DNA of 64,000 nucleotides, from IMG/VR virus record IMGVR_UViG_3300035698_010479, positions 62,001 through 126,000 of that record. One strand, 5' to 3'. Positions 913 to 49,225 of this stretch are shown piece by piece. Within the stretch, counting starts at the first letter, position 1; every line of letters starts with the position of its first letter. The notes under the pieces were generated by a model, which was not told where the DNA came from, made no database searches, and was given only the letters and a program-made list of their open reading frames with translations. The position numbers and the translations under genes are program-made.

Positions 913-917
913 CTAGT

Positions 918-4480: not shown

Positions 4481-5107
4481 ATGTTTAAATACCCAAAAAC
4501 GTATCACTTGACATGGTCGCCAGGAGTAACACATGACGATAAAATTATAAGTTCCTTAGATAACTTCATAGGTAAGCGTGTAATAGTGACCGAGAAATTA
4601 GATGGTGAATGTACTACTATCACAAAAGGAAATATACATGCCAGATCTATGGATTCAAAAGACCACGTGTCCAGACATTGGGTTAAAAGTCAATACGGAT
4701 ATTTGACTTACGCATTGAGAGAGCCTATTAAAATATGTGGTGAGAACGTGTTTGCTAAACATTCAATTGCATATGATAATCTAATTGGCTTCTTTTACGC
4801 TTTCTCTTTATGGGATGGTACTAAGTGCTTATCGTGGGATGACACGCTTGCAGAACTTGCTTTTCTTAATATACCACATGTACCAGTAATATATGATGGG
4901 CTGTGGGATGAATCGTATATAAGACATATTCCTCTTTTAAATACTGAGAAAGGTATTATGGAAGGGTATGTTGTTAGGTTGGCGGATGAATTTGAACTTA
5001 TTGAATTTAGTAACAGTGTGGCAAAATATGTAAGACCTAACCACGTGCAGACAGACGAACACTGGTTATACCAACCTATTATTAAAAATAAATTAATAGG
5101 AGATTAG
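4481..5107 (+). CDS. RNA ligase family nucleotidyltransferase
   Basis: KYPKTYHLTWSPG, motif I TEKLDGE, ICGEN, EGYVVR, VAKYVR. Confidence 0.85.
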   Translation: MFKYPKTYHLTWSPGVTHDDKIISSLDNFIGKRVIVTEKLDGECTTITKGNIHARSMDSKDHVSRHWVKSQYGYLTYALREPIKICGENVFAKHSIAYDNLIGFFYAFSLWDGTKCLSWDDTLAELAFLNIPHVPVIYDGLWDESYIRHIPLLNTEKGIMEGYVVRLADEFELIEFSNSVAKYVRPNHVQTDEHWLYQPIIKNKLIGD

Positions 5108-5331: not shown

Positions 5332-6474
5332 ATGGAAAGACAGTTAGCATCTATACAAAAAATAGTAGATATACAACCAATAGTTGGTGCTGATAAAATT
5401 GAAGTTGTGTTTATTCTAGGCTGGCAGTGTGTTGCAAAGAAGAACGAGTTTAAAATTGGTGATCTCTGTGTATATTTTGAAATAGACTCCCAGTTACCAA
5501 AGCATATTATATTTGATTTTATGGCACATAGAAAATTCAGAGTCAAAACAATCAAGCTTAGAAAACAAATATCACAAGGATTAGCATTACCACTGTCGAT
5601 TCTATCTAATTTTACAAATAAAAATATAAATTCTTTCCGTGAAGGGGATGATGTATCAGAATTAATAGGTGTTACTAAATATGACCCTAGGCCACAGGAT
5701 GCTGACCCAGTTAGTACTAAAAAGCATAATCCTATTGTTAATTATTTAATGGATTACTTCTGGTTTAGGAAAGTATATAACCTTGTTATGCCTAAAAAAA
5801 CTAAAGGCAACTTTCCAGAATTCATTAAAAAAACTGATGAGACTCGTTTACAAAGTTATCCATTAGTGCTCGTAAAAAATATAGGAAGAAAGTTCTATCT
5901 TACCGAGAAATTGGATGGTAGTTCTGCGTCTTATTTTTTTAATAAAGCACTTGTTGGTAAAAGGTTTGGATTGTTTCCTATCGACAAGGGTAATGGCTTT
6001 GGCGTATGTTCTAGAAATATAAGACTTGTCACACAAGATAAAAGATATTGGTGGAAGTACGCTCTAGATAATAATATGGAAGAAAAAACTAGAACCATTT
6101 CTAAATGTTTAGACTGTAGTATCGCTATACAGGGTGAACTCGTTGGTCCTGGTATTCAGAAAAATAAATATTGTTTAACCGAACTGGACTTTTATTGTTT
6201 TAATTTATTCAATATAGACACAAATACATATTTATCTAAAGAGGATAAAGAAATTATCTGTGATCAGTTTAATATAAAACTTGTTCCTTGTGATGATACT
6301 ATCATCGAATTATCTACTGAGCATGATGTTGCATTTTTTGTTAACCTTTCAAAAAGGAAAAGTAAGCTAAATAAAAAGACCACTGCTGAAGGTATAGTAG
6401 CAAGGAGATTAACAGACGAAACGATAAGCTTTAAAGTAATAAATCCAGAATGGTTACTAAAAAATGATGAATAA
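5332..6474 (+). CDS. RNA ligase, DRB0094-like family
   Basis: N-terminal RQLASIQKIVDIQPIVGADKIEV domain, TEKLDGSS, IQGELVGPGIQKN, EGIV, SFKVIN. Confidence 0.9.
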   Translation: MERQLASIQKIVDIQPIVGADKIEVVFILGWQCVAKKNEFKIGDLCVYFEIDSQLPKHIIFDFMAHRKFRVKTIKLRKQISQGLALPLSILSNFTNKNINSFREGDDVSELIGVTKYDPRPQDADPVSTKKHNPIVNYLMDYFWFRKVYNLVMPKKTKGNFPEFIKKTDETRLQSYPLVLVKNIGRKFYLTEKLDGSSASYFFNKALVGKRFGLFPIDKGNGFGVCSRNIRLVTQDKRYWWKYALDNNMEEKTRTISKCLDCSIAIQGELVGPGIQKNKYCLTELDFYCFNLFNIDTNTYLSKEDKEIICDQFNIKLVPCDDTIIELSTEHDVAFFVNLSKRKSKLNKKTTAEGIVARRLTDETISFKVINPEWLLKNDE

Positions 6475-7667: not shown

Positions 7668-7928
7668 TTAATTAGTGGGTGATAGCACAACACATGCAGG
7701 ACTTATCACTTTTTCTATTGTCCACATTTTTTCTTCCATACCGGCTTCATCAGCAGTCCATTGTGTAGACTTAACTTCACCATACCAATCGGTTTCTTTA
7801 ACGTATATAGCATCGGAGTCTACATCGTATAAAGGGCTATACCCATTACCTTCTGAGTCTTTCTGTAATATAACTATAGAATCCTGCGGCATACTTTGTA
7901 ATATCTCTATCAGTTCCTTTACTAGCAT
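7668..7928 (-). CDS. hypothetical protein
   Basis: 86-aa ORF, MLVKELIEILQ...DSEGNGYSP pattern typical of phage small proteins. Confidence 0.75.
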   Translation of the reverse strand: MLVKELIEILQSMPQDSIVILQKDSEGNGYSPLYDVDSDAIYVKETDWYGEVKSTQWTADEAGMEEKMWTIEKVISPACVVLSPTN

Positions 7929-8013
7929 ATATTATACTCCTTTAAAAATAACAACCATGAATTATATATCTGTACTCTATTCTATCTTCATATTTAGCTG
8001 GTTTAGGTCCATA

Positions 8014-8214
8014 CTATCTATATGTATAAGTACGTTCCTCACCACAAATTGGGCAATGTTCTTTTACAGTTTTATACCAATACTTAATTGATTCTGTATT
8101 ATCTCGTATTTTTCCGGTACCATCACAAGTAACACATTCAGTTTTTTTATTATTAACTCCAGTACCTTCGCAATCTATACAATGATATATTGGATTAAAC
8201 ATTAAATCACTCAT
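8014..8214 (-). CDS. DnaJ-type zinc-finger small protein
   Basis: CIDCEGTG, CVTCDGTG, CPICG. Confidence 0.65.
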   Translation of the reverse strand: MSDLMFNPIYHCIDCEGTGVNNKKTECVTCDGTGKIRDNTESIKYWYKTVKEHCPICGEERTYTYR

Positions 8215-8223
8215 TATAAACTC

Positions 8224-8967
8224 CTAAATAGTTATAATCTCTGCGCAATCTTTGTGTATTATTACTTGGTGTTCCACATGACAACTTATTTTACCAGAAT
8301 TTGTTACAACTGTCCAGCCATCATTTAATCTATGATTATCAGAAGGACCGTCTACAAGCATTGGTTCTATACAAATACACATACCTGCTTTTAATTTGAT
8401 ACCTTCTATATCCCTACCAAAGTTAAATATTGGTGGGTCCATATGTAAATCTCTTCCTATACCATGCCCAATGTAGTTTTTAACAACAGAGAAGCCGTAT
8501 TCTAATGCGTAGGCTTCAATTACTCTTCCAATAGTACCTACAGTAACTCCTTCTTTTATTTCCAATATAGCCCCATTTAAAGCCATTCTAGACACATCCA
8601 GTAATTCTTGTTTTTCAACACTAATAGTACCAACACCTGTAGAAAAAGCAGCGTCACCGTAGAAACCATTTTTATAGACACCAACATCAATACTTAGTAA
8701 ATCCCCTTCCACTAGTTCCTTACTTGTTGGGAAACCGTGTACTATGACTTCATTAGTACTGCAACAAGTACAAAAAGGAAAGCCTCTATACCCCTTGAAT
8801 GCGGGTAGTCCTCCTTCAGATAGTATTATTTTTTCAGCTATGCTATCTAATTCTAAAGTAGATATCCCAGGAACTACTAATTCAGCTAGTTCTCTATGGA
8901 CTAAAGCTACTATTCTACCACTTTCTCTCAACTTGTCTAAGTCACTACTAGTATGTGTAACAACCAA
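8224..8967 (-). CDS. map: methionine aminopeptidase type I
   Basis: STNEVIVHGFP, SIDVGVYKNGFYGDAA, GHGIG, IEPM, HVEHQV; likely TTG start at 8967 after AAGGAG (247 aa), not 9105. Confidence 0.95.
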   Translation of the reverse strand: MVVTHTSSDLDKLRESGRIVALVHRELAELVVPGISTLELDSIAEKIILSEGGLPAFKGYRGFPFCTCCSTNEVIVHGFPTSKELVEGDLLSIDVGVYKNGFYGDAAFSTGVGTISVEKQELLDVSRMALNGAILEIKEGVTVGTIGRVIEAYALEYGFSVVKNYIGHGIGRDLHMDPPIFNFGRDIEGIKLKAGMCICIEPMLVDGPSDNHRLNDGWTVVTNSGKISCHVEHQVIIHKDCAEIITI

Positions 8968-9082
8968 AGTACTCTCCTTATGTCTGTGTTTGCGCCCCCA
9001 AGTACTACTCACAATGTAGATAGTACTACTGATAGTGTATGGTTTGTTTGTTGTTTGTTGGGGTTTATCCCATCTATATTTT

Positions 9083-9149
9083 AAAAAATTTTGTGAAGTG
9101 AGCAAGCCCTTGAACCGAAACTTATTTCATACCTACAAGATTTTTACAA
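9083..9149. repeat. degenerate ~67-bp intergenic repeat, copy 1
   Basis: AAAAAATTTTGTGAAGTGAGCAAGCCCTTGAACCG...TTTCATACCTACAAGATTTTTACAA aligns with 9364-9430. Confidence 0.6.
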
Positions 9150-9158
9150 AAAGTATTA

Positions 9159-9356
9159 TTATTTAGTATATCTTATCAACTGATCATGAAACTGCATACT
9201 TTCTGTGGTACCTAAATTTGTTTTTGAGTGTGCTATAATCGCCTTTTTAGCTGATAAGGATTTAATGGTCCCCCTCATCAATCCTCTGTATCTAATTTGC
9301 ATAAATACTACTGAATCACCAATATTTAATTCATTACCTAAAAAATCTTTATACAT
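9159..9356 (-). CDS. hypothetical protein (SH3/KOW-like)
   Basis: MYKDFLGNELNIGDSVVF pattern; SD GGAGG. Confidence 0.7.
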   Translation of the reverse strand: MYKDFLGNELNIGDSVVFMQIRYRGLMRGTIKSLSAKKAIIAHSKTNLGTTESMQFHDQLIRYTK

Positions 9357-9636: not shown

Positions 9637-10578
9637 TTAAGAATCAAATAGGTAACTTAAACTTTGTTCATCATGTATACCTATTATTGCCTCTGCAAAT
9701 AAAGTAGCGGAGGATAATACTTCAATCTTTGTTGATAATTTTATAGATGTATTGTATATAGTATCTGTAACGTACAGTTTATCTATACTTGATCTCTCAA
9801 TATTACTTATAGCCTTGCCACTAAGTACAGGGTGGGTACAGTAACATTCAACAGATGCAGCACCATTATTTAGTAACACATTAGTAGCCTTTACTAATGT
9901 TCCACCAGAATCTACCATATCATCTGCGATTATACAGTGTTTATCTTTAACTTCACCTATCAAAAACATTTCTCCGATTTCAGATGGGCCTGTTCTCTGT
10001 TTGTATATCATTGCTACACTGCATCCTAATTTACCTGCATAACTTTTAGCAACTTTGATAGAACCAGCGTCTGGAGCGACTACGCATATACTATTCCCTG
10101 GATGATTGCTTTTTATATGAGGTACAAACACATTAAACATATGTAGGTTATCTACAGGTATATCAAAGAACCCAGATATTTGTGGACTATGTAATTCAGA
10201 CGTAAGTACTCTATCTGTGCCAGCAGTTTGTATGAGGTTGGCTACCACTTTTGCAGAAATAGGTACACGAGACATTACTTTTCTATCCTGCCTACTATAT
10301 GGATAGCAAGGTAACACTGTGGTAACTCTATAACAACTTGAACGTTTAAGGGCATCTAGTAGTAAAAATAACTCCATTAAATGTGTATCAGTTGTATTGC
10401 TTGCACCTTGAATTACAAACACATCCTTGTTACGTACATTTTCCTTTATTTCTACACGACATTCCCCATTACCGAATGTAGATGTTAACACACCTGTTAA
10501 TGGTACCCCTACTAAATTACTGATACTGTTTGCCAATGCTATATTGGCACTTCCAGAAATAATAGCTAATTCTTTCAT
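9637..10578 (-). CDS. prs: ribose-phosphate pyrophosphokinase
   Basis: FGNGE, YSRQDRK, LHSPQISGFFDIPVD, VAPDAG, DDMVDSGGT, THPVLS. Confidence 0.95.
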   Translation of the reverse strand: MKELAIISGSANIALANSISNLVGVPLTGVLTSTFGNGECRVEIKENVRNKDVFVIQGASNTTDTHLMELFLLLDALKRSSCYRVTTVLPCYPYSRQDRKVMSRVPISAKVVANLIQTAGTDRVLTSELHSPQISGFFDIPVDNLHMFNVFVPHIKSNHPGNSICVVAPDAGSIKVAKSYAGKLGCSVAMIYKQRTGPSEIGEMFLIGEVKDKHCIIADDMVDSGGTLVKATNVLLNNGAASVECYCTHPVLSGKAISNIERSSIDKLYVTDTIYNTSIKLSTKIEVLSSATLFAEAIIGIHDEQSLSYLFDS

Positions 10579-14243: not shown

Positions 14244-14759
14244 TTAACCCCCATTAGTGAATAATTGTGGATCTTCTGGCATAAAATCAAAAAAAGCTGG
14301 GTCTTGTGCTACCAAATAAGGTGCTGACACAGTCAGGCATCTATGATTCTCGTTAACTAAGTATTTATATTTAGGTTCTTTTCCCCAGATTCTTAATCTC
14401 TCTGTTATTATTTTTCTGCCTAGACCTTGCTGTATCATATTATTGAACTGGCGCTGAAATTTATATCTTATATATCTTATATAACCACTTCGCATGAATT
14501 CCCATATAACCTCATCTTTCTTTTCTATCATGTTGTCTGCAGTTGTAATTACTATGTAGCGATATCCTGTTAACTGTTCATATAATTTCTGCATAGTATA
14601 ACTGTAGTCAAGTGGCTCAATACCTATAATTATTACACCTAATTCAGTAACCTCAAAACAATCCGATAGGTTGGAGCCCAATGGTACCCGTTTATAGGGT
14701 ACCATAAAAGCTGAGAGCATCACAGATATTTCTGTTTGTAACTCCTCTAAACTATACAT
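14244..14759 (-). CDS. hypothetical protein
   Basis: 171-aa ORF coupled to the Clp ATPase gene. Confidence 0.75.
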   Translation of the reverse strand: MYSLEELQTEISVMLSAFMVPYKRVPLGSNLSDCFEVTELGVIIIGIEPLDYSYTMQKLYEQLTGYRYIVITTADNMIEKKDEVIWEFMRSGYIRYIRYKFQRQFNNMIQQGLGRKIITERLRIWGKEPKYKYLVNENHRCLTVSAPYLVAQDPAFFDFMPEDPQLFTNGG

Positions 14760-16695
14760 TAGCTACTTCCTTTAAAGCACCTTTCTGGTCGCTTTCTAGA
14801 TATGTAGGTGCCTTACTTGGTTTTTTGGAGAACTTGAATGTAACACCATTTTTTGCTGTACTTACTGTAACTATGGTATTAATATCTGTAGTACCCTTTA
14901 GTAGTTGTACTGCTAAAGGGGTAGATATATATCGTTCAATAGCTCTCTTTAAAGGTCTAGCACCATACTCTTTAGTAATACCTTTTTCGTATATAAAGTT
15001 ACATACTTTTTTATCAAAAAATATCTCTATATCTTTATATTTAGTTTTATTACTTTGTAAGTTAGTATTTAGTTTAAACAATTCGATATCAATGATTCTG
15101 AAATAGTCTTCTTTTGATAAGTCATTAAAGTAAATTATTTCATCTAATCTATTTAAAAATTCAGGTTTAAATTTCTTTTTTAGTGCTTGTTCCAAAGCTT
15201 GCTCTTTTTTAGCTTCTGTTACTACATTGACATCTCCAAAGCCAATAGTTTTTGATATACTAGCAATATTTTCTACACCTACATTAGATGTCATAATAAT
15301 TACTGTATCCTTAAAAGAAACTTTTGTACCTTTGTTATCTGTTAGTCTACCTTCTTCAAGCACCTGTAAAAGTAGTTGATATATTTTACTTGATGCTTTT
15401 TCTATTTCATCAAAAACTACCACACTAAATGGATTTTCAATTATAGCATTTGTTAAAAGGCCACCATTTTCGTATCCCTGATAACCATTTGGAGATCCTA
15501 TAAGTTTAGAATATTCATGATCTGCTGAATATTCAGAACAATCTATAGTTATCAAGTTATCACGGTCTTTTATCAATTCATTTGCAAGTATTTTTCCTGT
15601 TAAACTCTTCCCACAACCAGTAGATCCGGCAAACAAGAAAGAGCCGATAGGTTTAACTGGATCTTTAAGCCCTACACTAGCACGTTGTATAGCGTCAGTT
15701 AAACTAGCTACAACTTTATCTTGCCCTATAAGGGAGACTTTCATATTTGTAGCTAAATTTAAAAGGTCCTCTTCTGGAACGTCTGCAAAGACTTTCTTTT
15801 TCTTGTCCACTTTATTAGCAAACTGGTCCATAGCAGTAGCACCAGAAGACATAGTTTTCTTACCACTACCGCAATCAGTACAATCAGAAGGTTTTTTATC
15901 TTTGTTAGCTAGCTCCTGAGCATTCTCATAAGTCAGAAAAGGATTACAAGCTTGGCATATATCATATAGTTCTTTCATCAATAGTGGTGGTGATACTCTA
16001 GCTGGTACACCCATATTTTCTAGAACCTGAAACAAAGCTTCAAAGTCTTCGATACATAAAGTAACAACAAAAGTATTAAAGCTAACGCTACTATGAAAAA
16101 ATCTACCATTTATTAATTTACTTAAATCTTGCTCATTAAATACCTTCACAGATACATACCTGCCTATACGTTTCCACCATTTGTCTTTTGTGTTATATAT
16201 AGAATTGGTTGAAGTTTTATCCACAGGATTTCCTTGTTCATCAACAAAGCCATCCGCCAACTCCTTATTATCTGGTATAGTCACATCCGGTATATAGTCC
16301 CAAAGAGGGTTCTCTTCTAACGCTACCACTTCCTCCATATTAGTATCAGTAGTTTTTACTTTCAAAATATGATTTTTATTTATAACAATACTGGAATAAG
16401 CTAAATTTTTATTTTTAGAAAAAATTGCATCCAAGAAATTTGAACGTAATTTAAAAAAATCTAAATTTTTAGATAGTGTTTCGTCGCTTATTTTATGAAG
16501 AATTTGATTAATATTTGCTACACAAGTAGCAATTAAGTAATCATCATATAAGATCTTAGCAACAAGACCATCATCCTTAGCAAAAAAAGTTAGTTTATCT
16601 TCTATATCCTCTGATTTAATTTCTAAAATCAACAGGTTAAAATCTATTAATTCACAATAAACTTCGTGTACTTCGTAGTTAACGTTTTCAGTCAT
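14752..16695 (-). CDS. ClpA/B-type AAA+ ATPase with a single (D2) AAA module and an unfamiliar N-terminal region
   Basis: LIGQD, PIGSFLFAGSTGCGKS, DCSEY, LIGSPNGYQGY, FDEIEK, FKPEFLNRLD, YGARPLKR; no D1 Walker A seen. Confidence 0.88.
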   Translation of the reverse strand: MTENVNYEVHEVYCELIDFNLLILEIKSEDIEDKLTFFAKDDGLVAKILYDDYLIATCVANINQILHKISDETLSKNLDFFKLRSNFLDAIFSKNKNLAYSSIVINKNHILKVKTTDTNMEEVVALEENPLWDYIPDVTIPDNKELADGFVDEQGNPVDKTSTNSIYNTKDKWWKRIGRYVSVKVFNEQDLSKLINGRFFHSSVSFNTFVVTLCIEDFEALFQVLENMGVPARVSPPLLMKELYDICQACNPFLTYENAQELANKDKKPSDCTDCGSGKKTMSSGATAMDQFANKVDKKKKVFADVPEEDLLNLATNMKVSLIGQDKVVASLTDAIQRASVGLKDPVKPIGSFLFAGSTGCGKSLTGKILANELIKDRDNLITIDCSEYSADHEYSKLIGSPNGYQGYENGGLLTNAIIENPFSVVVFDEIEKASSKIYQLLLQVLEEGRLTDNKGTKVSFKDTVIIMTSNVGVENIASISKTIGFGDVNVVTEAKKEQALEQALKKKFKPEFLNRLDEIIYFNDLSKEDYFRIIDIELFKLNTNLQSNKTKYKDIEIFFDKKVCNFIYEKGITKEYGARPLKRAIERYISTPLAVQLLKGTTDINTIVTVSTAKNGVTFKFSKKPSKAPTYLESDQKGALKEVANV

Positions 16696-18128: not shown

Positions 18129-18692
18129 TTATTTATCTTCCCTCAACCAATAAGTCAAACCATTTGCTAAACTAAAAAAATCTGGAAAGAAGTTAACCCC
18201 ATCTACGTGCTCATTATAGTCATATCTTATAGAGAAAACAGTTACTTCTTTCTCCAAGGCCCTTTTCTGACTAGCGGGAGAGTCATCAATAAAAACACTA
18301 GCGTCATCCAATAAAAAATGTTTATCAAATCCTATATATAGATTGTTATAGGGTATATTTCTAATATCTAACCAGCGCTCAGTAGGCCCAAATGTTTCTG
18401 GGTCTCTATGTGAAGCGATAGTGACATGGTAACCACTCCTCATTAATGTCTTAGTCAATGCACCTGCATTTTGAAAACTACTGAATTCATGTTGACGCAT
18501 ATGTACTTCTTTTACAGTAGCTGCCATTTGATCTTCACTCATAAAGCCCTCATAAAAATGCCACTTAGCTTTATACTTATCTGTACTATTCCCAGGTAAT
18601 GGGCAATTAGGGTAATCCCTTTTTATAACTTCGCCCCAAATGTTGGCCATATTCCATAATATACCATCAATATCTACTACTGCTTTTTTCAT
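18129..18692 (-). CDS. 5'(3')-deoxyribonucleotidase-like HAD phosphatase
   Basis: VDIDGIL, IASHR, FIDDSP, YDYNE. Confidence 0.8.
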   Translation of the reverse strand: MKKAVVDIDGILWNMANIWGEVIKRDYPNCPLPGNSTDKYKAKWHFYEGFMSEDQMAATVKEVHMRQHEFSSFQNAGALTKTLMRSGYHVTIASHRDPETFGPTERWLDIRNIPYNNLYIGFDKHFLLDDASVFIDDSPASQKRALEKEVTVFSIRYDYNEHVDGVNFFPDFFSLANGLTYWLREDK

Positions 18693-18711
18693 TTAATTCT
18701 CCTTTATAATG

Positions 18712-18798
18712 CGGATAGGGAGGGATTTGAACCCTCGGTAGCTTTTAAACTACACCTGTTTAGCAGACAAGCACCATAGGCCACTCGGTCACCTATCC
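18712..18798 (-). tRNA. tRNA-Ser(GCT)
   Basis: GGATAGG acceptor, D loop with GG, CT-GCT-AA loop, long variable arm, GGTTCAAATCC; no encoded CCA. Confidence 0.92.
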
Positions 18799-18809
18799 AT
18801 TAACTAAAG

Positions 18810-19100
18810 TTAATATTTAATTTTATGTAATTTTTTATGACAAGCACTACATACAGTGATCAAATTTTTAATAGGCTCGTTCCATGGGTACTTCTTTGTA
18901 TACTTTAAATGGTGGAGATGCAATGTAGTTTCTGTATCACCACATTTCATGCACTTCCAACCGTCTCTTTCAAACATTTTCAAACGCTTCTTTTGCCATT
19001 TTGGATGTTGGAGGGCTGCAGCATACTGCTCTTTTGAAAGCTTTTTATATGGCTTATTTATCTTTTTAGTTATTTTTTTACTAATAATTTTATTCTTCAT
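18810..19100 (-). CDS. HNH endonuclease
   Basis: WQKKRLKMFERDGWKCMKCG, LHLHH, NLITVCSACH. Confidence 0.88.
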   Translation of the reverse strand: MKNKIISKKITKKINKPYKKLSKEQYAAALQHPKWQKKRLKMFERDGWKCMKCGDTETTLHLHHLKYTKKYPWNEPIKNLITVCSACHKKLHKIKY

Positions 19101-19422: not shown

Positions 19423-19812
19423 TTATAATAATTTTAAATGTCCAGTAATGGTGTCTATAACCTCAGATTCTGCTGGACCGATAGCTAAACATGTGCGTGT
19501 AGGAATACCGTTAAACTCTGTTTTTCCAGAGTCTGTTATAAGCGAACAAATAAGATTAGCACTCTTTGCCTTATAATGTATAGTTAATAATTCTTCTTCA
19601 GAGTCCACACTTACACATACCTTAGTAAAGGAATTTTCTAACCAACTCAAGGTTTCGTCAGAAAACCAAGGAGGTACATCAGCTGTAACACATGTGGTAT
19701 AATCTAATTCTTTTAAAATATTAGCTAGGCTGGCATGGCAGCCTTGTGCCACCATTTTTCCTTTACGCATGTTTAAATCTTTACGCATGACTATAACTTG
19801 CTTGGTATTCAT
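19423..19812 (-). CDS. pth2: peptidyl-tRNA hydrolase type 2
   Basis: KQVIVMRKDLNMRKGKMVAQGCHAS, KVCVSV, DSGKTEF, TCLAIGP, ITGHLKLL. Confidence 0.92.
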   Translation of the reverse strand: MNTKQVIVMRKDLNMRKGKMVAQGCHASLANILKELDYTTCVTADVPPWFSDETLSWLENSFTKVCVSVDSEEELLTIHYKAKSANLICSLITDSGKTEFNGIPTRTCLAIGPAESEVIDTITGHLKLL

Positions 19813-20033
19813 TCAAATATCTCCATGGATATACTTACTCCTGAAATAATACTTTCTGCATACCTGTGCCCTAAAGTACCTACAGACTGCATCTCTATGT
19901 TTATACTTTGATCAGCATGGGTAATACCAGTATCTAGCTTAAACTGTTCAAATATATTAGATACTACTATAAGTATATCATGCTCCGCCTGTTTTTTAAG
20001 ATTATTAAGCTGTTTAATATTTAATTCACACAT
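19809..20033 (-). CDS. hypothetical protein
   Basis: 74-aa ORF. Confidence 0.6.
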   Translation of the reverse strand: MCELNIKQLNNLKKQAEHDILIVVSNIFEQFKLDTGITHADQSINIEMQSVGTLGHRYAESIISGVSISMEIFE

Positions 20034-20043
20034 AACATAAACC

Positions 20044-20220
20044 TCATCTATGGTAAGTAACGTCCGTAAGCTTATCTTTTATCTTCTTGATGGTTGCTTT
20101 CTTAATAACAAACCCATGTCCTGAGCACCTATCACAGCTAAAAAGTCTATCATCCATATTGATTTCACCTGTACCGTTACACATATAACATATTGTAAAA
20201 CTTTCTTTTATTTTTAACAT
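20044..20220 (-). CDS. DnaJ-type zinc-finger small protein
   Basis: CYMCNGTG, CDRCSGHG; true start ATG 20220 after AGGAG (the upstream part of the listed ORF is the tRNA). Confidence 0.7.
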   Translation of the reverse strand: MLKIKESFTICYMCNGTGEINMDDRLFSCDRCSGHGFVIKKATIKKIKDKLTDVTYHR

Positions 20221-20246
20221 TATTATACTCCTTATATTAATATGTT

Positions 20247-20321
20247 TGTTCCTAGTGAGAATCGAACTCACAACGAAACGCAGGTTTAGAATCTGCCGCT
20301 CTACCACTGAGCTATAGGAAC
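20247..20321 (-). tRNA. amber suppressor tRNA (anticodon CUA)
   Basis: GTTCCTA-TA-GCTC AGTGGTA GAGC-G-GCAGA TTCTAAA CCTGC-GTTTCGTT-GTGAG TTCGATT CTCAC-TAGGAAC-A. Confidence 0.85.
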
Positions 20322-20323
20322 AT

Positions 20324-20355
20324 ATGAGGCTTATATTGTTAGGTATAAGCCTCAT
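20324..20355 (-). terminator. 12-bp hairpin immediately 5' of the suppressor tRNA
   Basis: ATGAGGCTTATA / TATAAGCCTCAT inverted repeat. Confidence 0.55.
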
Positions 20356-20359
20356 GTTT

Positions 20360-20605
20360 TTAAACCTCCAATTCCTCACCCATAATAAGTGTAACAACAT
20401 AACGCTGTTTCTTCATAAAATCAACATAACTTAGTGCTTCATTTAATAATGTGAACTCCTTAAAATCTTTACCAGAACTATCATTACAGTATGAGTCAAC
20501 GCTATATACATAATAACAATGGTGTACTTCGTCACCCCAGCCCTGAACTATCTTGTTAAGTTCTCTAATCTTATCCTTTTTATTTTCATCCATAATTATA
20601 ATCAA
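20360..20605 (-). CDS. hypothetical protein
   Basis: 81-aa ORF. Confidence 0.6.
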   Translation of the reverse strand: MIIIMDENKKDKIRELNKIVQGWGDEVHHCYYVYSVDSYCNDSSGKDFKEFTLLNEALSYVDFMKKQRYVVTLIMGEELEV

Positions 20606-20607
20606 CC

Positions 20608-20904
20608 TTAAAGTAGACGCATACTCTCGAAGAATTCATTACCACCCAAACTTGCTATAGCAGTAAGTTGATTTCCTATATCAGGTTCTTTAAAACTTAC
20701 ATGTGGTATATTACTCCAGTTTAGATCATTTGTCAAGCGCTTTAATTCACCCTCATTATTTACTTTGAGATAGACCAACGTACCGTTATCCCAGTTTGTA
20801 AGTCTGTTATTTAATAAGTATTCAGCCAAAGCATGACCAGCTTGAACGGCTTGCTGAGACTTAGATAGATCTTTACGTGTTATTACATATAGTTTATGCT
20901 GCAT
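20608..20904 (-). CDS. Pth2-fold phage protein (peptidyl-tRNA hydrolase-like)
   Basis: KLYVITRKDL, QAVQAGHA, FKEPDIGNQLTAIA. Confidence 0.72.
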   Translation of the reverse strand: MQHKLYVITRKDLSKSQQAVQAGHALAEYLLNNRLTNWDNGTLVYLKVNNEGELKRLTNDLNWSNIPHVSFKEPDIGNQLTAIASLGGNEFFESMRLL

Positions 20905-21941: not shown

Positions 21942-22559
21942 TTAATATTTTATAAGTACTACCGCCAGTACACCAGAGGAATCATATATATGATCCTTAT
22001 TTAAAACTGTTTGTAAAGTATAACCATATTTTTCAAATAAGTCAAGCCACCATTGCTTAGAATGTATTTGAATATGTGTTTTATCATTTTTACTTACGTC
22101 CAGTACAAAGTCTTCACCTTCTACGGCTGCTACCGGTATACGTACTATAAGCTGTGTTGCGTTTACTATATCACCAATAATAGTGTGTAGTGAAAAGGTA
22201 GGTATATGTTCGAGTACATCTAAAAATAGTAGTATATCAAATGGCCCAGAAACTAAATCTGGGTTATAATGATGTAATATACCTCCTAGATTATACTGGT
22301 CAATACCAAATTCTACAGCCCAATAACTTATATCAGTACCTTCACATAGTACATTACGGTTATTTAGTTCATATATTAAACCACCTGTAGCTGCCCCATA
22401 GTCCAGTACGCTTTTGTTCTTTAAGTAAGGAAGTAAATCATCTGCCAATCCTGAAAATTTCTTCTCTCTATAATCTTCATAATTACTTATGGTACTTCTC
22501 ACATAATAATTTTTGTCAAATAGCATACTATGACCTTTAAATAAATTTGGAGTGGCCAC
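21942..22559 (-). CDS. class I SAM-dependent methyltransferase
   Basis: VLDYGAATG, GTDIS, DVLEHI. Confidence 0.88.
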   Translation of the reverse strand: MATPNLFKGHSMLFDKNYYVRSTISNYEDYREKKFSGLADDLLPYLKNKSVLDYGAATGGLIYELNNRNVLCEGTDISYWAVEFGIDQYNLGGILHHYNPDLVSGPFDILLFLDVLEHIPTFSLHTIIGDIVNATQLIVRIPVAAVEGEDFVLDVSKNDKTHIQIHSKQWWLDLFEKYGYTLQTVLNKDHIYDSSGVLAVVLIKY

Positions 22560-23475
22560 ATGGCATAATTACTTGCTCAATAAGGTCATTGTGTTCATTG
22601 AAGAAACATTTACCTTCTTTACAGTTACAAGTATCAAAAGCGGTATCTTTTTTATATGTGTTCTCCCAAGTTTTAATTATATCATCAATATGACATAATG
22701 TAAAGTCAGAATTAAATTTTCTGTCAATTAGAGGGTTAGCACTACAATGATAGACATAGCCATCGGCATTAACAAATGGTTTTATTCTGCCCATCCAACA
22801 TTTATTTGGTACTGTATATTTCTTTTGTTGAAAAAAGAATTTTGGGTACTTATCTAAATAAGGTTGGATCATGTCTGTTGATTTATTTATGTCTTCAATA
22901 GATAGGCAATTAGGTACTATACGAACATAAGTAGCTTTATATTTATCTGCATATGCTGAAATTTTATCTAGCTGTTTTTCTGTTGATAAATCAGTAATTA
23001 CGTAAGAAAAACCTAAAACAACATTTGAAGGTATATTAATATCTATATCTTCAACGTAGTCTAAACTATTAAGACTTATTCTTAACCAAGTTAGTCTACT
23101 AAGATTTTTATAACTAACGTTATCTAGTTTTACACCATTAGTAATCATACCGATACCAGAGTAATTATAAGCAGCAAATTCTATAATATCATTAATGTGC
23201 TTATACATTGTTGGATCGCCTCCTCCGGTAAACTCAACAGTCTTTGCACCAAGAGTTTTAAAATCTGTAAGTACCTTGATAGACTGTTCTAAAGAAAGTT
23301 CATCAGCTTTATTTCGATTTGCTACAGAACACATTACGCAATTTAAATTACATTTATTAGTGGGGGCTAATTGAATACTGATAGGTCTAAAATAACCTTG
23401 CTGCATCTCCTTTAATCTATCCAGATTATGAAGTAATTTATTTTGTGTGCTTGTGTACAGCTGTTCTTTATTCAT
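22537..23475 (-). CDS. radical SAM protein with SPASM/twitch-like C-terminus
   Basis: CNLNCVMC, FTGGGDP, ITNG, CW...NADGYVYHC...CNCKEGKC. Confidence 0.9.
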   Translation of the reverse strand: MNKEQLYTSTQNKLLHNLDRLKEMQQGYFRPISIQLAPTNKCNLNCVMCSVANRNKADELSLEQSIKVLTDFKTLGAKTVEFTGGGDPTMYKHINDIIEFAAYNYSGIGMITNGVKLDNVSYKNLSRLTWLRISLNSLDYVEDIDINIPSNVVLGFSYVITDLSTEKQLDKISAYADKYKATYVRIVPNCLSIEDINKSTDMIQPYLDKYPKFFFQQKKYTVPNKCWMGRIKPFVNADGYVYHCSANPLIDRKFNSDFTLCHIDDIIKTWENTYKKDTAFDTCNCKEGKCFFNEHNDLIEQVIMPCGHSKFI

Positions 23476-24607: not shown

Positions 24608-24693
24608 TGGGTAGTGATGGAATCGAACCATATGCCCTGTGGGAATAGATTTACAGTCTATCGTAGGACCATCCTACCTTATATACACCACCC
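24608..24693 (-). tRNA. tRNA-Tyr(GTA), atypical (extra ~7 nt between acceptor and D stems)
   Basis: GGGTGGT acceptor / ACTACCC, GTAG-GATGGTC-CTAC D arm, ATAGA CTGTAAA TCTAT, variable arm, GGTTCGATTCC. Confidence 0.75.
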
Positions 24694-31352: not shown

Positions 31353-33209
31353 TCAAACAGAAGCTTGTGACTCTTCAGGGCCTTGTTGTGGTTGTTCGGC
31401 TGGTTGTGCTTGTGCGTATAGTTTTTCTGATATAGGGTGAAATGCTAAGTTAAGTTCCTCAATCTTTTTAGTAAGTTCTTCTACAGAGACATCTTTAGAA
31501 ATAAGTTCACGAATCTCTGATATTTTAATGGCTAGGTCGTCTTTTTCCTCTTCAGAAACCTTATCAGAGTTATCCTTAATAGTTTTCTCCATTTGATAAG
31601 CGGTATTTTCGGCTTGGTTTTTTGCTTCAATTAAACTACGTTTAGCTTTATCGGCCTCTGCATGTTCCTCTGCTTCTGCTACCATACGGGCAATATCATC
31701 TTTAGAAAGCCCTGAAGAAGATTCAATTTTTATTGACTGCTCTTTACCTGTACCTAAATCTTTTGCTGACACGGTTAAAATACCATTAGCGTCAATATTA
31801 AAACTAACTTCAACCTGTGGTACACCTCTTGGCGCTGGTGGGATACCTACCAAATCAAATCTGCCCAATGTTTTATTATCCTGCGCCATTTCACGCTCGC
31901 CCTGAATAACGTGTATGGAGACAGCGTTTTGATTGTCAACAGCTGTGCTAAAAACCTGGGTTCTCAATACAGGTATTGACGTATTTTTATCTATAATTCT
32001 GGTAGCTACACCACCTAGAGTTTCAATGCTAAAAGAAAGCGCCGTAACATCAAGTAGTAATACATCAGTAGTAACGCCTGCAATAATACTTGCCTGAATA
32101 GCAGCACCCTGTGCTACTACTTCATCAGGATTTACTGATTTATTTAACTTTTTATTAAAAAAATCTTCAACCACTTTTTGTACAGCAGGTATACGTGTAG
32201 ATCCACCCACTAAAATAATCTCATCAATACTATCTTTGGTTAGATGAGCATCATTTAACACGGTCTTACAAAGAACTAAGATTTTATCTACTAAATCAGA
32301 TGTCATACTATCAAACCTAGACCTAGTTAACTTAGTATTTAGATGTTTTGGACCAGAAGCATCCGCTGTGATGAATGGTATATTAATAGTTACCTCCATA
32401 GCAGAAGATAGCTCTTTCTTGGCTTTCTCAGCTTCATCTTTCAGGCGCTGAAGGGCCATATTATCATTACGCAGGTTAATACCTTCATTCTTTTTGAAGT
32501 CGTCTACCAACCAATTAACGATAACTTGGTCAAAATCAGTACCTCCAAGATAACTATTGCCGAATGTACCTATAACTTCAACAACATTATCACCTAAATC
32601 TAATATAGATGTATCACTGGTACCTGCACCAATGTCTACGATCATGACCTTTTCTTCTTTATCGCCTTCAAAGCCGTAAGCAAGTGCAGCAGCTGTAGGT
32701 TCATTAATTATACGTTTTATATCTAGCCCAGCTATCTTACCTGCATCTTTTGTAGCCTGTCTTTGGGCATCTGTAAAATACGCAGGTACAGTAACAACTG
32801 CTTCTGTTACTGTTTCACCTAAGTAATCCTCAGCGTATTTCTTCATCTCTGCTAATACAGCTGCAGATATTTCTACAGGTGACATTAATTTACCATCAAT
32901 ATTAATTAATACTTCACCGGAGGGACCCTCACTTAATTTAAAAGGTGCTATCTTTATAAAATCTTGAACTTCCTTATCCTTATATAAGCGGCCTATAAGT
33001 CTTTTTGCTTCATAGACTGTTCTTTCTGAGTTGGTGACAGCCTGTCGTTTAGCTGCACCACCTACTAATTTAGTGTCATTAGTAAATGCAACTACACTTG
33101 GGGTAGTTGAAGTACCATCACTAGAAAAAATAATTTTTGGTGTACCACTTTCCATAACTGAAACACATGAAAAGCCTGTTCCAAGGTCTATTCCAACAAT
33201 CTTTCCCAT
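31353..33209 (-). CDS. dnaK: Hsp70 chaperone DnaK
   Basis: [50 protein letters not shown]. Confidence 0.97.
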
Positions 33210-49163: not shown

Positions 49164-49225
49164 AATTAATAAGTGTTATAGCATAGTAGAGTTAGTTAAA
49201 TATAGGGATGTAATTAATAGTATTA

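What the first reader, a model, noticed from the sequence alone, without database searches (positions are those of the whole stretch)
20247..20355. Amber-suppressor tRNA (CUA) in a genome that otherwise reads in the standard code
Seen: a complete cloverleaf with anticodon loop TT-CTA-AA. The arm GCAGA-TTCTAAA-CCTGC resembles a tRNA-Tyr arm (GCAGA-CTGTAAA-TCTGC) and has A73 and an 8-nt variable region. Canonical D-loop GG and TTC argue against tRNA-Pyl. A 12-bp hairpin lies just upstream. Long genes in this window have no internal TAG. Known: some large phages carry suppressor tRNAs and recode TAG, often in late genes. Inference: conditional TAG readthrough, an early stage of recoding, or recoded genes elsewhere in the genome.
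Basis: partly seen in the sequence, partly recalled or inferred. Interest (0 to 1): 0.8.

Follow-up and report, generated by a model that had tools for sequence, protein, structure and literature searches.

The report
Amber suppressor tRNA paired with hydrolase gene
A real, evolutionarily conserved stop-codon-reading (amber suppressor) tRNA sits in a jumbo phage that otherwise uses the normal genetic code, and it is consistently paired with a small peptidyl-tRNA-hydrolase-like gene that in many other huge phages contains an in-frame TAG, which suggests a dedicated target for these puzzling tRNAs.

Summary
The tRNA is real: window 20247-20321, minus strand, anticodon CUA, Rfam 62 bits. The 12-bp hairpin directly upstream is real too. 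The window is part of a 228-kb jumbo-phage contig.

The genome is not TAG-recoded in what I could sample:
- 104 kb of it reads at 90-93% coding density in code 11.
- TAG ends about 20% of genes.
- Those TAG stops swap with TAA/TGA at the same positions in relatives.
- A relative's tail module, including a 7,659-residue tape-measure gene, has no in-frame TAG.
- Lak phages served as a positive control and show the recoding signature.

The tRNA is neither an error nor a recent accident. A CUA tRNA occupies the same syntenic site in four relatives (ClpB-like protein identity 86-51%).

The new result is a partner gene. A 98-aa PTH2-fold gene (20608-20904) lies just upstream of the tRNA in all these phages and in unrelated ones. 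In two clade relatives it carries an internal in-frame TAG. In nine other lineages, including cultured Acinetobacter phage ME3 and Serratia phage BF, it reads ATG, 0-2 codons, TAG, then the conserved body. All 12 in-frame stops seen in this family are TAG. The focal copy has none.

The most likely reading is a working, low-level amber suppressor that belongs to a conserved tRNA/PTH2-like module. The inserted amino acid is undetermined, with weak hints for Lys.

The parts
20247..20321 (-). tRNA with anticodon CUA (amber suppressor). Class I, G1-C72, A73, 8-nt variable region, A31.C39 mismatch, no encoded CCA.
   Evidence: ARAGORN. Rfam RF00005 at 62 bits. Cloverleaf parsed. CUA tRNAs at the syntenic site in relatives L229-L232. 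Pairing and covariation count.
20325..20356 (-). 12-bp hairpin in the spacer directly 5' of the tRNA. It is either part of the pre-tRNA leader or the 3' end of the upstream mRNA.
   Evidence: -16 kcal/mol, z = -6.7. Hairpins of unrelated sequence occupy the same place in L229, L230 and L002 (z = -6.4, -6.0, -3.0). Weak or absent in L231 and L232.
20608..20904 (-). 98-aa PTH2-fold (peptidyl-tRNA hydrolase 2-like) gene, the conserved partner of the tRNA. This copy has no in-frame TAG.
   Evidence: Pfam PF01981, E = 5e-5, 23.9 bits against a 23-bit cut-off. Profile hits to solved Pth2 structures. AF2 model with pLDDT 91; the top 13 Foldseek hits are all Pth2, TM 0.72-0.83. Orthologues lie next to CUA tRNAs in L229-L232 and L002. 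In-frame TAG in L230 and L232 and in 9 other lineages.
20360..20605 (-). 81-aa ORF (TTG start) between the PTH2-like gene and the hairpin. Function unknown.
   Evidence: the ORF listing. No significant family hit. In L229 and L230 the space between the gene and the tRNA is only about 50 nt, so this ORF is absent there.
19809..20033 (-). 74-aa ORF immediately downstream of the tRNA. Function unknown.
   Evidence: Rough gene model. No family hits. A 72-aa gene is called at the same place in the relative (L308 5411-5629).
19423..19812 (-). Full-length PTH2-type peptidyl-tRNA hydrolase, 129 aa, 435 nt downstream of the tRNA.
   Evidence: Pfam PF01981, E = 8e-35. Orthologues downstream of the tRNA in L229 and L230. 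JGI Pfam call in L308.

Best explanation
This is a functional amber-suppressor tRNA that belongs to a conserved two-part module of huge phages: a small PTH2-fold hydrolase gene followed on the same strand by a tRNA(CUA).

Proposed mechanism:
- The tRNA is transcribed with, or just after, the PTH2-like gene.
- RNase P cuts at the tRNA 5' end. The hairpin then forms the 3' end of the upstream mRNA or acts as an attenuator.
- The host adds CCA, and a host synthetase charges the tRNA. The amino acid is undetermined. G1-C72, A73 and U35 argue against bacterial Trp or Gln identity and fit Lys best.
- The charged tRNA competes with release factor 1 at UAG at a modest level.

Its conserved client is the PTH2-like gene itself. 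In sister phages and many unrelated huge phages this gene can only be made full-length by reading through a UAG, at codon 2-4 or at an internal codon. Hydrolase output is therefore tied to suppressor activity, as a sensor or feedback loop on termination and read-through.

In the focal phage the client gene carries no TAG. The module is present but the coupling is by linkage only. The rest of the sampled genome uses TAG as a true stop, and those stops avoid the suppression-prone context of a following A.

Shown: the tRNA and its conservation, the standard code in the sampled DNA, the linkage, the in-frame TAGs, and the PTH2 fold. Inferred: expression, charging, suppression, co-transcription and the feedback logic.
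For: The tRNA is real and well formed.

Conservation:
- A CUA tRNA sits at the same syntenic site in L229, L230, L231 and L232, whose ClpB-like proteins are 86, 73, 51 and 52% identical to the window's.
- Across six CUA tRNAs, 96.8% of cells pair and 17 of 21 pairs show compensatory changes.
- U33-CUA-A37-A38, G1-C72 and A73 are invariant.

Standard code:
- The window is 93% coding and the assembled 104 kb is 90% coding, with TAG ending 29 of 146 genes.
- TAG stops align with TAA/TGA stops at the same position in orthologues. PolA has TAA in five relatives and TGA in two.
- The relative is 98% coding across its tail and replication region, which includes a 7,659-aa tape-measure gene.
- The density test detects recoding in the Lak loci, 0.64-0.68 rising to 0.92-0.94.

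Partner gene:
- The PTH2-like gene is adjacent to the tRNA in all five clade phages and in the unrelated L002.
- Co-occurrence is perfect in 80 ClpB-anchored loci, 5 with both and 75 with neither, although the five form a single clade.
- A suppressor tRNA lies within 0.1-8 kb of the gene in 8 of 14 GenBank huge-phage loci and in two further lineages.

In-frame TAG:
- L230 has one at codon 46 and L232 at codon 60. Frame, motifs and C-terminus are preserved after each.
- A clade-wide scan found in-frame TAGs inside conserved genes only in this family.
- The pattern ATG, 0-2 codons, TAG, then the conserved body occurs in LR756500, LR756501 (which also has an internal TAG), LR745206, LR756511, LR756502, LR756504, ME3, Serratia BF and L002.
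- All 12 in-frame stops are TAG, where about 36% would be expected for random single-step nonsense mutations.
- Those loci are otherwise standard code.

Other: the PTH2 fold is supported. TAG stops are followed by A in 10 of 68 cases in the clade, against 62 of 200 in low-GC control phages (p = 0.011) and 114 of 327 for TAA/TGA stops (p = 0.0009).
Against: - The focal phage's own PTH2-like gene has no TAG, and neither do those of L229, L231, L329 and L330-L332. In this genome no client codon has been identified.
- No expression, charging or suppression data exist, and read-level checks were impossible.
- 124 kb of the contig was not examined.
- Three phages with an early-TAG gene show no suppressor tRNA within 10 kb.
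- XacN1 and RAS14 have the domain fused into a longer TAG-free ORF away from any tRNA.
- The two internal TAGs within the clade are not significant on their own (p about 0.13) and could be young pseudogenes.
- In six of the nine early-TAG genes the next codon is ATT, a rare possible start. A mini-ORF plus re-initiation is not excluded for those.
- The linked tRNAs are not orthologous across phages.
- The stop-context statistic rests on small, phylogenetically non-independent counts.
Confidence: 0.6

Rival explanations
1. The tRNA serves genuine TAG-to-sense recoding of late genes (head, packaging or lysis) that lie in the unsampled 124 kb of the genome, as in crAss-like, Lak and other code-15 phages.
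For: Borges et al. (10.1101/2021.08.26.457843) show that recoding is concentrated in structural and lysis genes while replication genes and the tRNA itself stay in standard code. The window is mostly replication and metabolism. Contig positions 1-42,171 and 145,969-228,458 were not seen.
Against: - TAG is a frequent stop here, about 20%, and is interchangeable with TAA/TGA across the clade.
- Probable virion genes are intact in code 11: LamG/baseplate-like 37251-39215, and the 1219-aa lectin-domain protein in L221, which itself ends in TAG.
- In the relative that carries the syntenic tRNA, about 45 kb of tail genes have no in-frame TAG. These include part of a 7,659-aa tape measure and genes of 2,269, 1,890, 1,063, 958, 898, 870 and 615 aa.
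- The same density test clearly detects recoding in Lak.
Confidence: 0.12
2. The tRNA is a general, untargeted tool. Low-level read-through of host and/or phage UAG stops, or buffering against amber nonsense mutations, is itself the benefit, and the neighbouring PTH2-like gene is only one of many translation-maintenance genes kept in the same region.
For: - Cultured standard-code jumbo phages carry orphan CUA tRNAs for which no target was found: XacN1 (PMC5852040) and RsoM2USA (PMC8504454).
- The focal PTH2-like gene has no TAG.
- The region is rich in translation and RNA-repair genes: tRNAs, PTH2, RNA ligases and a PNK-like gene.
- Chaperones (Hsp70, ClpB-like) that could absorb extended proteins are encoded nearby.
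Against: This does not explain why in-frame TAGs recur specifically in this one gene family in at least a dozen phages, with no TAA or TGA. It also does not explain why the gene and the tRNA are immediate neighbours in unrelated genomes such as L002, ME3 and LR756500.
Confidence: 0.15
3. The molecule is not used as a suppressor in translation. It could be a decoy or substitute substrate in the conflict with host anticodon nucleases, or an RNA with another role, or a neutral passenger. The TAGs in the PTH2-like genes would then be pseudogene lesions or mini-ORF stops.
For: The phage encodes RNA ligases and kinase/phosphatase-like genes typical of tRNA repair, which points to conflict over tRNAs. 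The 31-39 mismatch in 4 of 6 tRNAs and the 8-nt variable loop are unusual. Six of nine early TAGs are followed by ATT.
Against: - The anticodon loop U33-CUA-A37-A38 is invariant while the stems co-vary, which indicates selection on decoding.
- Reading frames, motifs and stop positions are preserved after internal TAGs.
- In L002 the invariant K-L-Y residues lie between the TAG and the next possible start.
- GTT and AAT follow the TAG in three lineages and cannot initiate.
- All interruptions are TAG.
Confidence: 0.1
4. Artefact: the C of the anticodon is a sequencing or assembly error in an ordinary tRNA (Tyr GUA, Trp CCA or Lys CUU).
For: A single contig is the only source of this exact sequence. 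Loci L001, L011 and L228 are the same contig. Reads could not be checked.
Against: Four syntenic relatives from other metagenomes, with very different stem sequences, all have CUA. L002, from yet another sample, has the identical 23-nt arm with CUA. At least eight further phage lineages pair a CUA tRNA with the same gene.
Confidence: 0.02

Closest known systems
Orphan CUA suppressor tRNAs of cultured standard-code jumbo phages (Xanthomonas XacN1, Ralstonia RsoM2USA; also annotated in Acinetobacter ME3 and Serratia BF)
   Same: A jumbo phage with many tRNAs, the standard code, TAG used as a stop, and one or two tRNA(CUA) genes. XacN1, ME3 and BF also encode a homologue of the PTH2-like protein.
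   Different: Those papers report no target. In-silico read-through in XacN1 found nothing. Here the tRNA is shown to be syntenically conserved across a clade and linked to a specific gene family that carries in-frame TAGs. The tRNA sequences are not similar to the focal one.
Suppressor tRNAs of TAG-recoded (code 15) phages such as Lak megaphages and crAss-like phages, and the 'code-change module' of Jade phages (Borges et al.)
   Same: A phage-encoded stop-codon suppressor tRNA encoded in standard code. There is a proposed regulatory use of stop read-through, and the tRNA sits beside other translation factors. Lak phages also keep the PTH2-like gene 0.6-0.7 kb from a suppressor tRNA.
   Different: There is no genome-wide or late-gene recoding in the sampled DNA and TAG is not depleted. 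No release factor or synthetase was found among the genes scanned. The partner is a PTH2-fold hydrolase, which that work does not mention. In Lak the neighbouring tRNA has anticodon UUA.
Standard-code relatives of recoded phages that have acquired a suppressor tRNA ('precursor to recoding', Borges et al. Fig. 3A)
   Same: A suppressor tRNA in a low-GC, standard-code phage.
   Different: That model expects the stop codon to be depleted and the acquisition to be recent. Here TAG is about 20% of stops, and the tRNA is shared by relatives down to about 50% ClpB-like protein identity.
Laboratory amber suppressors of E. coli (supF from tRNA-Tyr, su7 from tRNA-Trp, supE from tRNA-Gln). This comparison is from established knowledge and was not tested here.
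   Same: A single-base change in the anticodon of an ordinary tRNA gives CUA. The focal arm is identical to the arms of tRNA-Trp(CCA) genes found in metagenomes except for C35 to U.
   Different: The acceptor end (G1-C72, A73) is not Trp-like or Gln-like. The tRNA is class I, so it is not a bacterial tRNA-Tyr. It is a conserved natural gene and not a mutant allele.
Theta (HDV-like) ribozymes next to phage suppressor tRNAs (PMC10879173)
   Same: A structured RNA element directly flanks a phage suppressor tRNA and is thought to affect its maturation.
   Different: Here the element is a simple hairpin upstream of the tRNA. No ribozyme family was detected within 900 nt at E up to 10.

Membership tests
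Canonical elongator tRNA (Rfam RF00005) | Cloverleaf with 7/4/5/5-bp stems, a 7-nt anticodon loop with U33, G18G19 and the T-loop UUC | tested here: met
   62 bits against a gathering score of 29. Parsed. The only irregularities are the A31.C39 mismatch and the 8-nt variable region.
Amber suppressor tRNA | Anticodon CUA kept by selection | tested here: met
   CUA is present in the four syntenic relatives and in L002. The loop U33-CUA-A37-A38 is invariant while 17 of 21 stem pairs co-vary.
Amber suppressor tRNA | Is aminoacylated and reads UAG in vivo | not testable with these tools
   There is only indirect support: in-frame TAGs in the neighbouring gene family and avoidance of A after TAG stops.
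tRNA-Pyl | Short D-loop without G18G19, 6-bp anticodon stem, 3-nt variable loop, no canonical T-loop, and pylS/pylBCD genes present | tested here: not met
   Canonical D and T loops, a 5-bp anticodon stem and an 8-nt variable region. No Pyl genes were found among the proteins scanned. ARAGORN's 'Pyl' label simply names the anticodon.
Bacterial tRNA-Tyr derivative (supF-like) | Class II long variable arm; A73; relation to the genome's own tRNA-Tyr | tested here: not met
   A73 is present, but the variable region is 8 nt in the window and 4-6 nt in relatives. The phage's tRNA-Tyr (24608-24693) is class II and unrelated.
Bacterial tRNA-Trp derivative (su7-like) | Trp-type anticodon arm plus the Trp acceptor identity (G73, A1-U72) | tested here: not met
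   In metagenomes the exact arm occurs only in Trp(CCA) tRNAs. Those have A1-U72 and G73, while all six CUA tRNAs have G1-C72 and A73. L231 and L232 carry a separate normal tRNA-Trp.
TAG-recoded (code 15) phage genome | Coding density and ORF length rise sharply when TAG is read as sense | tested here: not met
   The window is 93% coding in code 11. The flanks gain at most 7-9 points, in tRNA-rich spacers only. The relative goes from 98% to 97%. Lak control loci go from 0.64-0.68 to 0.92-0.94.
TAG-recoded (code 15) phage genome | In-frame TAG in structural and lysis genes | tested here: inconclusive
   Tail and fibre-like genes of the focal phage and the relative have none.
TAG-recoded (code 15) phage genome | TAG rare or absent as a true stop | tested here: not met
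   29 of 146 genes end in TAG. The stop type swaps freely among orthologues.
PTH2 peptidyl-tRNA hydrolase family (PF01981), for the 98-aa partner gene | PTH2 sequence signature and fold | tested here: met
   Pfam 23.9 bits against a cut-off of 23. A profile of 32 homologues hits Pth2 structures at E = 3e-5. AF2 pLDDT 91.4; Foldseek top 13 hits are all Pth2, TM 0.72-0.83.
PTH2 peptidyl-tRNA hydrolase family (PF01981), for the 98-aa partner gene | Hydrolyses peptidyl-tRNA | not testable with these tools
   The protein is about 15-20 residues shorter than archaeal or human Pth2. Its C-terminal motif reads EPD...TAIA where I recall DAG.T in classical Pth2 (from memory, not tested). Its activity and substrate are unknown.
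Theta-ribozyme-associated suppressor tRNA | Minimal HDV-like ribozyme adjacent to the tRNA | tested here: not met
   Apart from the tRNA, nothing in 19800-20700 comes near its family's gathering score at E up to 10. I did not verify that Rfam 15 contains a theta-ribozyme model.

The most novel reading that the evidence does not exclude
Huge phages share a previously undescribed translational circuit. An amber suppressor tRNA is paired with a PTH2-fold hydrolase gene whose own translation is gated by a UAG, usually at codon 2-4. The hydrolase is then made only when suppression outcompetes release factor 1. That would give the phage a sensor, a timer or a negative feedback on stop-codon read-through. 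It would also supply the long-missing dedicated client for the orphan suppressor tRNAs of standard-code jumbo phages. The focal phage would be a member in which the gate codon has been lost.
Probability: 0.45. Interest if true: 0.85.

Novelty: new variant of a known kind. Interest (0 to 1): 0.7.

Why it matters
Suppressor tRNAs in phages that keep the standard code have been recorded several times and left unexplained. The XacN1 authors looked for read-through targets and found none.

If the tRNA/PTH2-like pairing is functional, it gives these tRNAs a concrete, testable client. It would be a natural example of a single gene gated by stop-codon suppression in otherwise standard-code genomes. 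It also links suppression to peptidyl-tRNA recycling.

The question becomes directly testable in cultured systems (Acinetobacter phage ME3, Serratia phage BF), where the gene is mis-annotated or unannotated because of its TAG. There is a practical annotation point too: this small gene is systematically truncated or missed by code-11 gene callers.

For the focal genome itself, the practical message is that it should be annotated in code 11 despite the CUA tRNA.

Tried and rejected
- Nucleotide searches of GenBank phages found no close relative. The tRNA alone hit only a mycobacteriophage tRNA-Trp at 84% over 56 nt.
- Exact-protein look-ups for window-edge proteins failed. The window's proteins are on record only on contigs under 2 kb, so the focal contig could be walked only with the capped viral scans.
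- I looked for a repeated motif of at least 14 nt that could fetch many parts of the contig in one scan. None exists.
- A scan with the radical-SAM neighbour returned only the source contig.
- Read-through fusions: TAG-terminated genes followed by same-frame ORFs (3044-3928/3938-4132, 31082-31300/30752-31048, PolA/51199-51579, 57781-58257/57391-57777) all have their own start codons. PolA ends in TAA/TGA in relatives. Rejected as programmed read-through.
- Backup stops: extensions after TAG are no shorter than after TAA or TGA.
- Nearest-neighbour isotype assignment with the anticodon masked was inconclusive, because the reference tRNAs had been selected by the same arm.
- The first all-ORF scan for in-frame stops was swamped by antisense shadow ORFs and was redone with gene models.
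- No ribozyme or other Rfam family flanks the tRNA.
- One look-up returned gene calls but no DNA.
Full report
**1. Observation**

ARAGORN reports seven tRNAs in the window. One, at 20246-20322 on the minus strand, has anticodon CTA. Rfam's tRNA model scores 20247-20321 at 62 bits over its full length.

Parsed by hand, it is a regular cloverleaf:
- acceptor GUUCCUA/UAGGAAC, with G1-C72 and discriminator A73
- D-arm GCUC-AGUGGUA-GAGC
- anticodon arm GCAGA-UUCUAAA-CCUGC, with an A31.C39 mismatch
- an 8-nt variable region
- T-arm GUGAG-UUCGAUU-CUCAC
- no encoded CCA

The hairpin at 20325-20356 has 12 bp, folds at -16 kcal/mol with z = -6.7, and ends 3 nt before the tRNA. ARAGORN's 'tRNA-Pyl' label only names the anticodon, because the Pyl-specific architecture is absent.

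**2. What genome this is**

The window is 33% GC and densely coding. It encodes:
- a family A DNA polymerase
- a split ribonucleotide reductase
- Hsp70
- a ClpB-like ATPase
- RNA ligases
- PRPP synthetase
- a LamG/baseplate-like protein

It matches IMG/VR contig IMGVR_UViG_3300035698_010479 at 100% identity. That contig is 228,458 bp, and the window corresponds to about positions 62,004-126,003. This is a jumbo phage. It has no close relative among deposited phages, but several relatives exist in IMG/VR.

**3. Is TAG recoded?**

No, as far as I could sample.

- In code 11 the window is 93% coding. Stops are TAA 68, TAG 19 and TGA 13.
- I extended the sequence with four scans to contig positions 42,172-145,968, about 104 kb. 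The right extension is 98-99% coding. It includes genes of 1219, 1071, 919, 722 and 550 aa.
- The left extension is a tRNA-rich region. Its gaps hold tRNAs and spacers, not TAG-interrupted ORFs.
- Over the 104 kb, TAG ends 29 of 146 genes. Extensions after TAG are no shorter than after other stops.
- At the exact position of the focal TAG stops, orthologues in relatives have TAA or TGA. For PolA it is TAA in five relatives and TGA in two. TAG is therefore a true stop.
- Relative Ga0308317_1081605 (161 kb) carries the syntenic CUA tRNA. I walked about 50 kb of new sequence from it, and with earlier loci I hold 107 kb of that contig.
- Its tail region includes a 7,659-residue tape-measure gene and genes of 2,269, 1,890, 1,063, 958, 898, 870 and 615 residues with LamG or Big_1 domains. 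All are intact in code 11. Coverage is 98% and does not improve when TAG is read as sense.
- The same density test applied to Lak phage loci gives the expected recoding signature (0.64-0.68 rising to 0.92-0.94, with mean ORF length doubling), so the test works.
- Head, packaging and lysis genes were not reached.

**4. The tRNA is conserved**

Using the ClpB-like gene as an anchor, I fetched 80 loci. The four closest relatives have ClpB-like proteins 86, 73, 51 and 52% identical to the window's. Each has a tRNA(CUA) on the same strand upstream of that gene.

Their stems differ widely. The six CUA tRNAs (these four, the window and L002) pair in 96.8% of cells, and 17 of 21 pairs show compensatory changes. 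U33-CUA-A37-A38, G1-C72 and A73 are invariant. Position 31-39 is an A.C or C.A mismatch in 4 of 6.

Covariation alone only shows that each is a good tRNA. The informative point is that the anticodon is kept at a syntenic site over deep divergence. This rules out a sequencing error in practice and argues against a recent step toward recoding.

**5. Ancestry and amino-acid identity**

The exact arm with a free anticodon occurs in metagenomes only in tRNA-Trp(CCA) genes. The looser stem also occurs in Arg, Met, Lys and Phe tRNAs of bacteria. So the window's arm is one base (C35 to U) away from a Trp-type arm.

However, genuine Trp tRNAs with this arm have A1-U72 and G73, while all the CUA tRNAs have G1-C72 and A73. 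L231 and L232 also carry a separate normal tRNA-Trp. The phage's tRNA-Tyr is class II and unrelated. Nearest-neighbour typing was inconclusive.

From established identity rules of E. coli synthetases (my knowledge, not tested here), a class I tRNA with U35 and A73 is most likely to be charged by LysRS, with GlnRS as the alternative.

There is a weak hint in the same direction. The two internal TAGs in the clade align with Lys in the nearest relatives: AAA in the window and L229 for one, AAG in L231 and L002 for the other. But the internal TAG of LR756501 aligns with Glu, Asp or Val in related phages. The inserted residue remains undetermined.

**6. The partner gene**

The tRNA lies between two PTH2-type genes. 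Downstream is a full-length peptidyl-tRNA hydrolase (19423-19812, PF01981, E = 8e-35). Upstream is a 98-aa PTH2-like gene (20608-20904, E = 5e-5).

The small protein belongs to a family of more than 440 proteins of about 96-98 aa in metagenomes, many on contigs of 100-330 kb. A profile of this family hits solved Pth2 structures. Its AF2 model (pLDDT 91.4) matches Pth2 structures, including human Bit1/PTRH2, at TM 0.72-0.83.

Orthologues lie upstream of the CUA tRNA in all four relatives, and in L002, an otherwise unrelated 9.8-kb contig whose tRNA shares the window's 23-nt arm. Among the 80 ClpB-anchored loci, gene and tRNA co-occur perfectly: 5 have both and 75 have neither. Those five are one clade.

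**7. In-frame TAGs are confined to this gene family**

- In L230 the orthologue has TAG at codon 46. In L232 it has TAG at codon 60. The frame, the EPD...TAIA...LKLL motifs and the stop position are preserved after each.
- A scan of gene models across about 400 kb of clade sequence found in-frame TAGs inside conserved genes only in these two cases. The three non-TAG hits came from queries that look like shadow ORFs.
- A tblastn search of GenBank phages found homologues in 43 records, all huge or jumbo phages. They include Lak, the LR7565xx/LR7452xx huge phages, XacN1, RAS14/CM1, ME3, Serratia BF, and Yersinia and Erwinia relatives.
- In 8 of the 14 loci I fetched, the gene reads ATG, one or two codons, TAG, then the conserved body. 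These are LR756500, LR756501 (which also has a second internal TAG), LR745206, LR756511, LR756502, LR756504, ME3 and BF. L002 reads ATG-TAG-AAT..., with the family's invariant K-L-Y encoded after the TAG.
- A ribosome-binding site and an ATG precede each TAG. The next codon is ATT (six cases), GTT (one) or AAT (two), so re-initiation cannot be the general explanation.
- All 12 in-frame stops are TAG. About 36% of random single-step nonsense changes in these genes would give TAG.
- Around these genes the genomes read as standard code.
- GenBank annotation truncates the gene in ME3 and omits it in BF and its relatives.

**8. Suppressor tRNAs sit nearby in unrelated phages**

| Phage (locus) | Suppressor tRNA | Distance from the PTH2-like gene |
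|---|---|---|
| LR756500 (L315) | CUA | 0.8 kb |
| LR756501 (L319) | two CUA | 2.2 kb |
| ME3 (L326) | CUA | 0.45 kb |
| Serratia BF (L327) | CUA | 3.3 kb |
| LR756511 (L321) | CUA | 8.2 kb |
| LR745208 (L324) | UUA | 0.15 kb |
| Lak-B5 (L316) | UUA | 0.6 kb |
| Lak-C1 (L317) | UUA | 0.7 kb |
| Ga0611991 (L329) | CUA | about 3 kb |
| L330-L332 group | CUA | about 3 kb |

The last two lineages are TAG-free family members, and they also encode a tmRNA.

Six loci are exceptions:
- LR745206, LR756502 and LR756504 have none within 10 kb, although their gene carries an early TAG.
- RAS14 and XacN1 have the domain fused into a longer ORF. XacN1's CUA tRNAs lie in the terminal repeats.
- Aeromonas Ahp1 has none.

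The linked tRNAs are not orthologous across phages. What recurs is the functional pairing.

**9. Hairpin and stop context**

A strong hairpin of unrelated sequence fills the spacer between the PTH2-like gene and the tRNA in L229, L230 and L002, as it does in the window. It is weak or absent in L231 and L232, where the tRNA is further away. With only 3 nt between the hairpin and the tRNA, the tRNA must be transcribed through it. After RNase P cleavage the hairpin would form the 3' end of the upstream message. This is inference.

In the clade, TAG stops are followed by A in 10 of 68 cases. The comparison values are 114 of 327 for TAA/TGA stops (p = 0.0009), 62 of 200 in low-GC control phages (p = 0.011), and 29% for all TAG trinucleotides. 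Amber suppression is classically favoured by a 3' purine, especially A (my knowledge). So this is the direction expected if the suppressor is active. The counts are small and the genes are not independent.

**10. Interpretation**

Best supported: a working amber suppressor that is part of a conserved tRNA/PTH2-like module. In many phages the hydrolase-like gene needs UAG read-through, so its output reports suppressor activity. In the focal phage the gene has no TAG, and no client codon has been found in the 104 kb examined.

Rivals are:
- recoded late genes in the unsampled 124 kb
- a general, untargeted read-through function
- a non-translational role or pseudogene lesions
- an artefact

**11. 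Comparison with what is known**

Suppressor tRNAs in standard-code phages are already on record. XacN1 has two CUA tRNAs and no target was found (PMC5852040). RsoM2USA has one (PMC8504454). Atu_ph07 has a UCA suppressor (PMC6102473). Borges et al. report one in a standard-code relative of recoded phages. The bare observation is therefore not new.

I found no paper in the searchable library that links PTH2 with phage suppressor tRNAs or that reports the TAG-containing gene. That library does not cover subscription journals.

**12. Limits**

- No reads could be examined.
- There are no expression data.
- 54% of the focal contig was not seen.
- The GenBank sample is 14 of 43 hits.
- Several statistics ignore phylogenetic non-independence.

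Noticed in passing
window 46421-50482 (minus strand): The ribonucleotide reductase large subunit is split into two ORFs (49226-50482 and 46421-48148), with a 342-aa ORF (48135-49163) between them. This may be an intron, an intein or a homing-endonuclease insertion.
   Followed up: no
window 891-1373, 4481-5107, 5332-6474, 18129-18692; L023:2154-3599: A set that looks like tRNA/RNA repair: two RNA ligases, a phosphatase, a polynucleotide-kinase-like protein and a 481-aa 'RNA-binding protein' family member. This suggests conflict with host anticodon nucleases.
   Followed up: no
window 14752-16695 and 31353-33209; L310:20276-20438: The phage encodes chaperones: a ClpB-like AAA+ ATPase and a full-length Hsp70. 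The relative also has a DnaJ.
   Followed up: no
window 9637-10578; L023:6482-7378 and 7916-9247: NAD+/PRPP salvage genes: ribose-phosphate pyrophosphokinase, an NMN adenylyltransferase/Nudix-like protein and nicotinamide phosphoribosyltransferase.
   Followed up: no
L314:1-4881 and L311-L313 (relative Ga0308317_1081605): An exceptionally long tape-measure gene of 7,659 residues (PF10145), followed by a run of very large genes (2,269, 1,890, 1,063 and 958 aa) with LamG or Big_1 domains.
   Followed up: partly
L329:2253-2602; L330:7815-8197; L331 and L332:8055-8437: Phage-encoded tmRNA genes lie near the PTH2-like gene and the CUA tRNA in more distant jumbo-phage lineages. Together with PTH2 this makes a ribosome-rescue and tRNA-recycling set.
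   Followed up: no
L327:9974-10312 (Serratia phage BF, KY630187.1 about 286,083-286,421); also hits H48-H56: The PTH2-like gene is not annotated in GenBank records of Serratia BF, Yersinia fHe-Yen9-03 and the Erwinia pEa_SNUABM phages. In BF this is because of a TAG at codon 4; I did not check the others. In Acinetobacter ME3 the annotated CDS starts after the TAG.
   Followed up: partly
L316:9341-9413 and L317:9234-9306 (Lak-B5, Lak-C1): In the TAG-recoded Lak megaphages, the tRNA next to the PTH2-like gene has anticodon UUA (ochre type), not CUA.
   Followed up: no
window 18810-19100: An HNH endonuclease ORF lies directly beside tRNA-Ser(GCU) at 18711-18798.
   Followed up: no
L222:7843-8850 (contig about 50,014-51,021): About 1 kb has no ORF of 50 aa or more in any code, within the tRNA-rich region left of the window. 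It might hold an unrecognised RNA.
   Followed up: no
L311:3182-13192 (relative): The 2,269-aa gene ends in TAG and is followed after two codons by the 1,063-aa gene in the same frame. Read-through would give a protein of about 3,336 aa. The arrangement is not conserved in the focal phage, where the two genes overlap in different frames.
   Followed up: partly
window 22537-23475, 21942-22559, 3044-3928: Two radical-SAM proteins and a methyltransferase lie near the tRNAs. In the relative the same block also has a glycosyltransferase and an N6/N4 methylase. This may be a nucleic-acid modification cassette.
   Followed up: no
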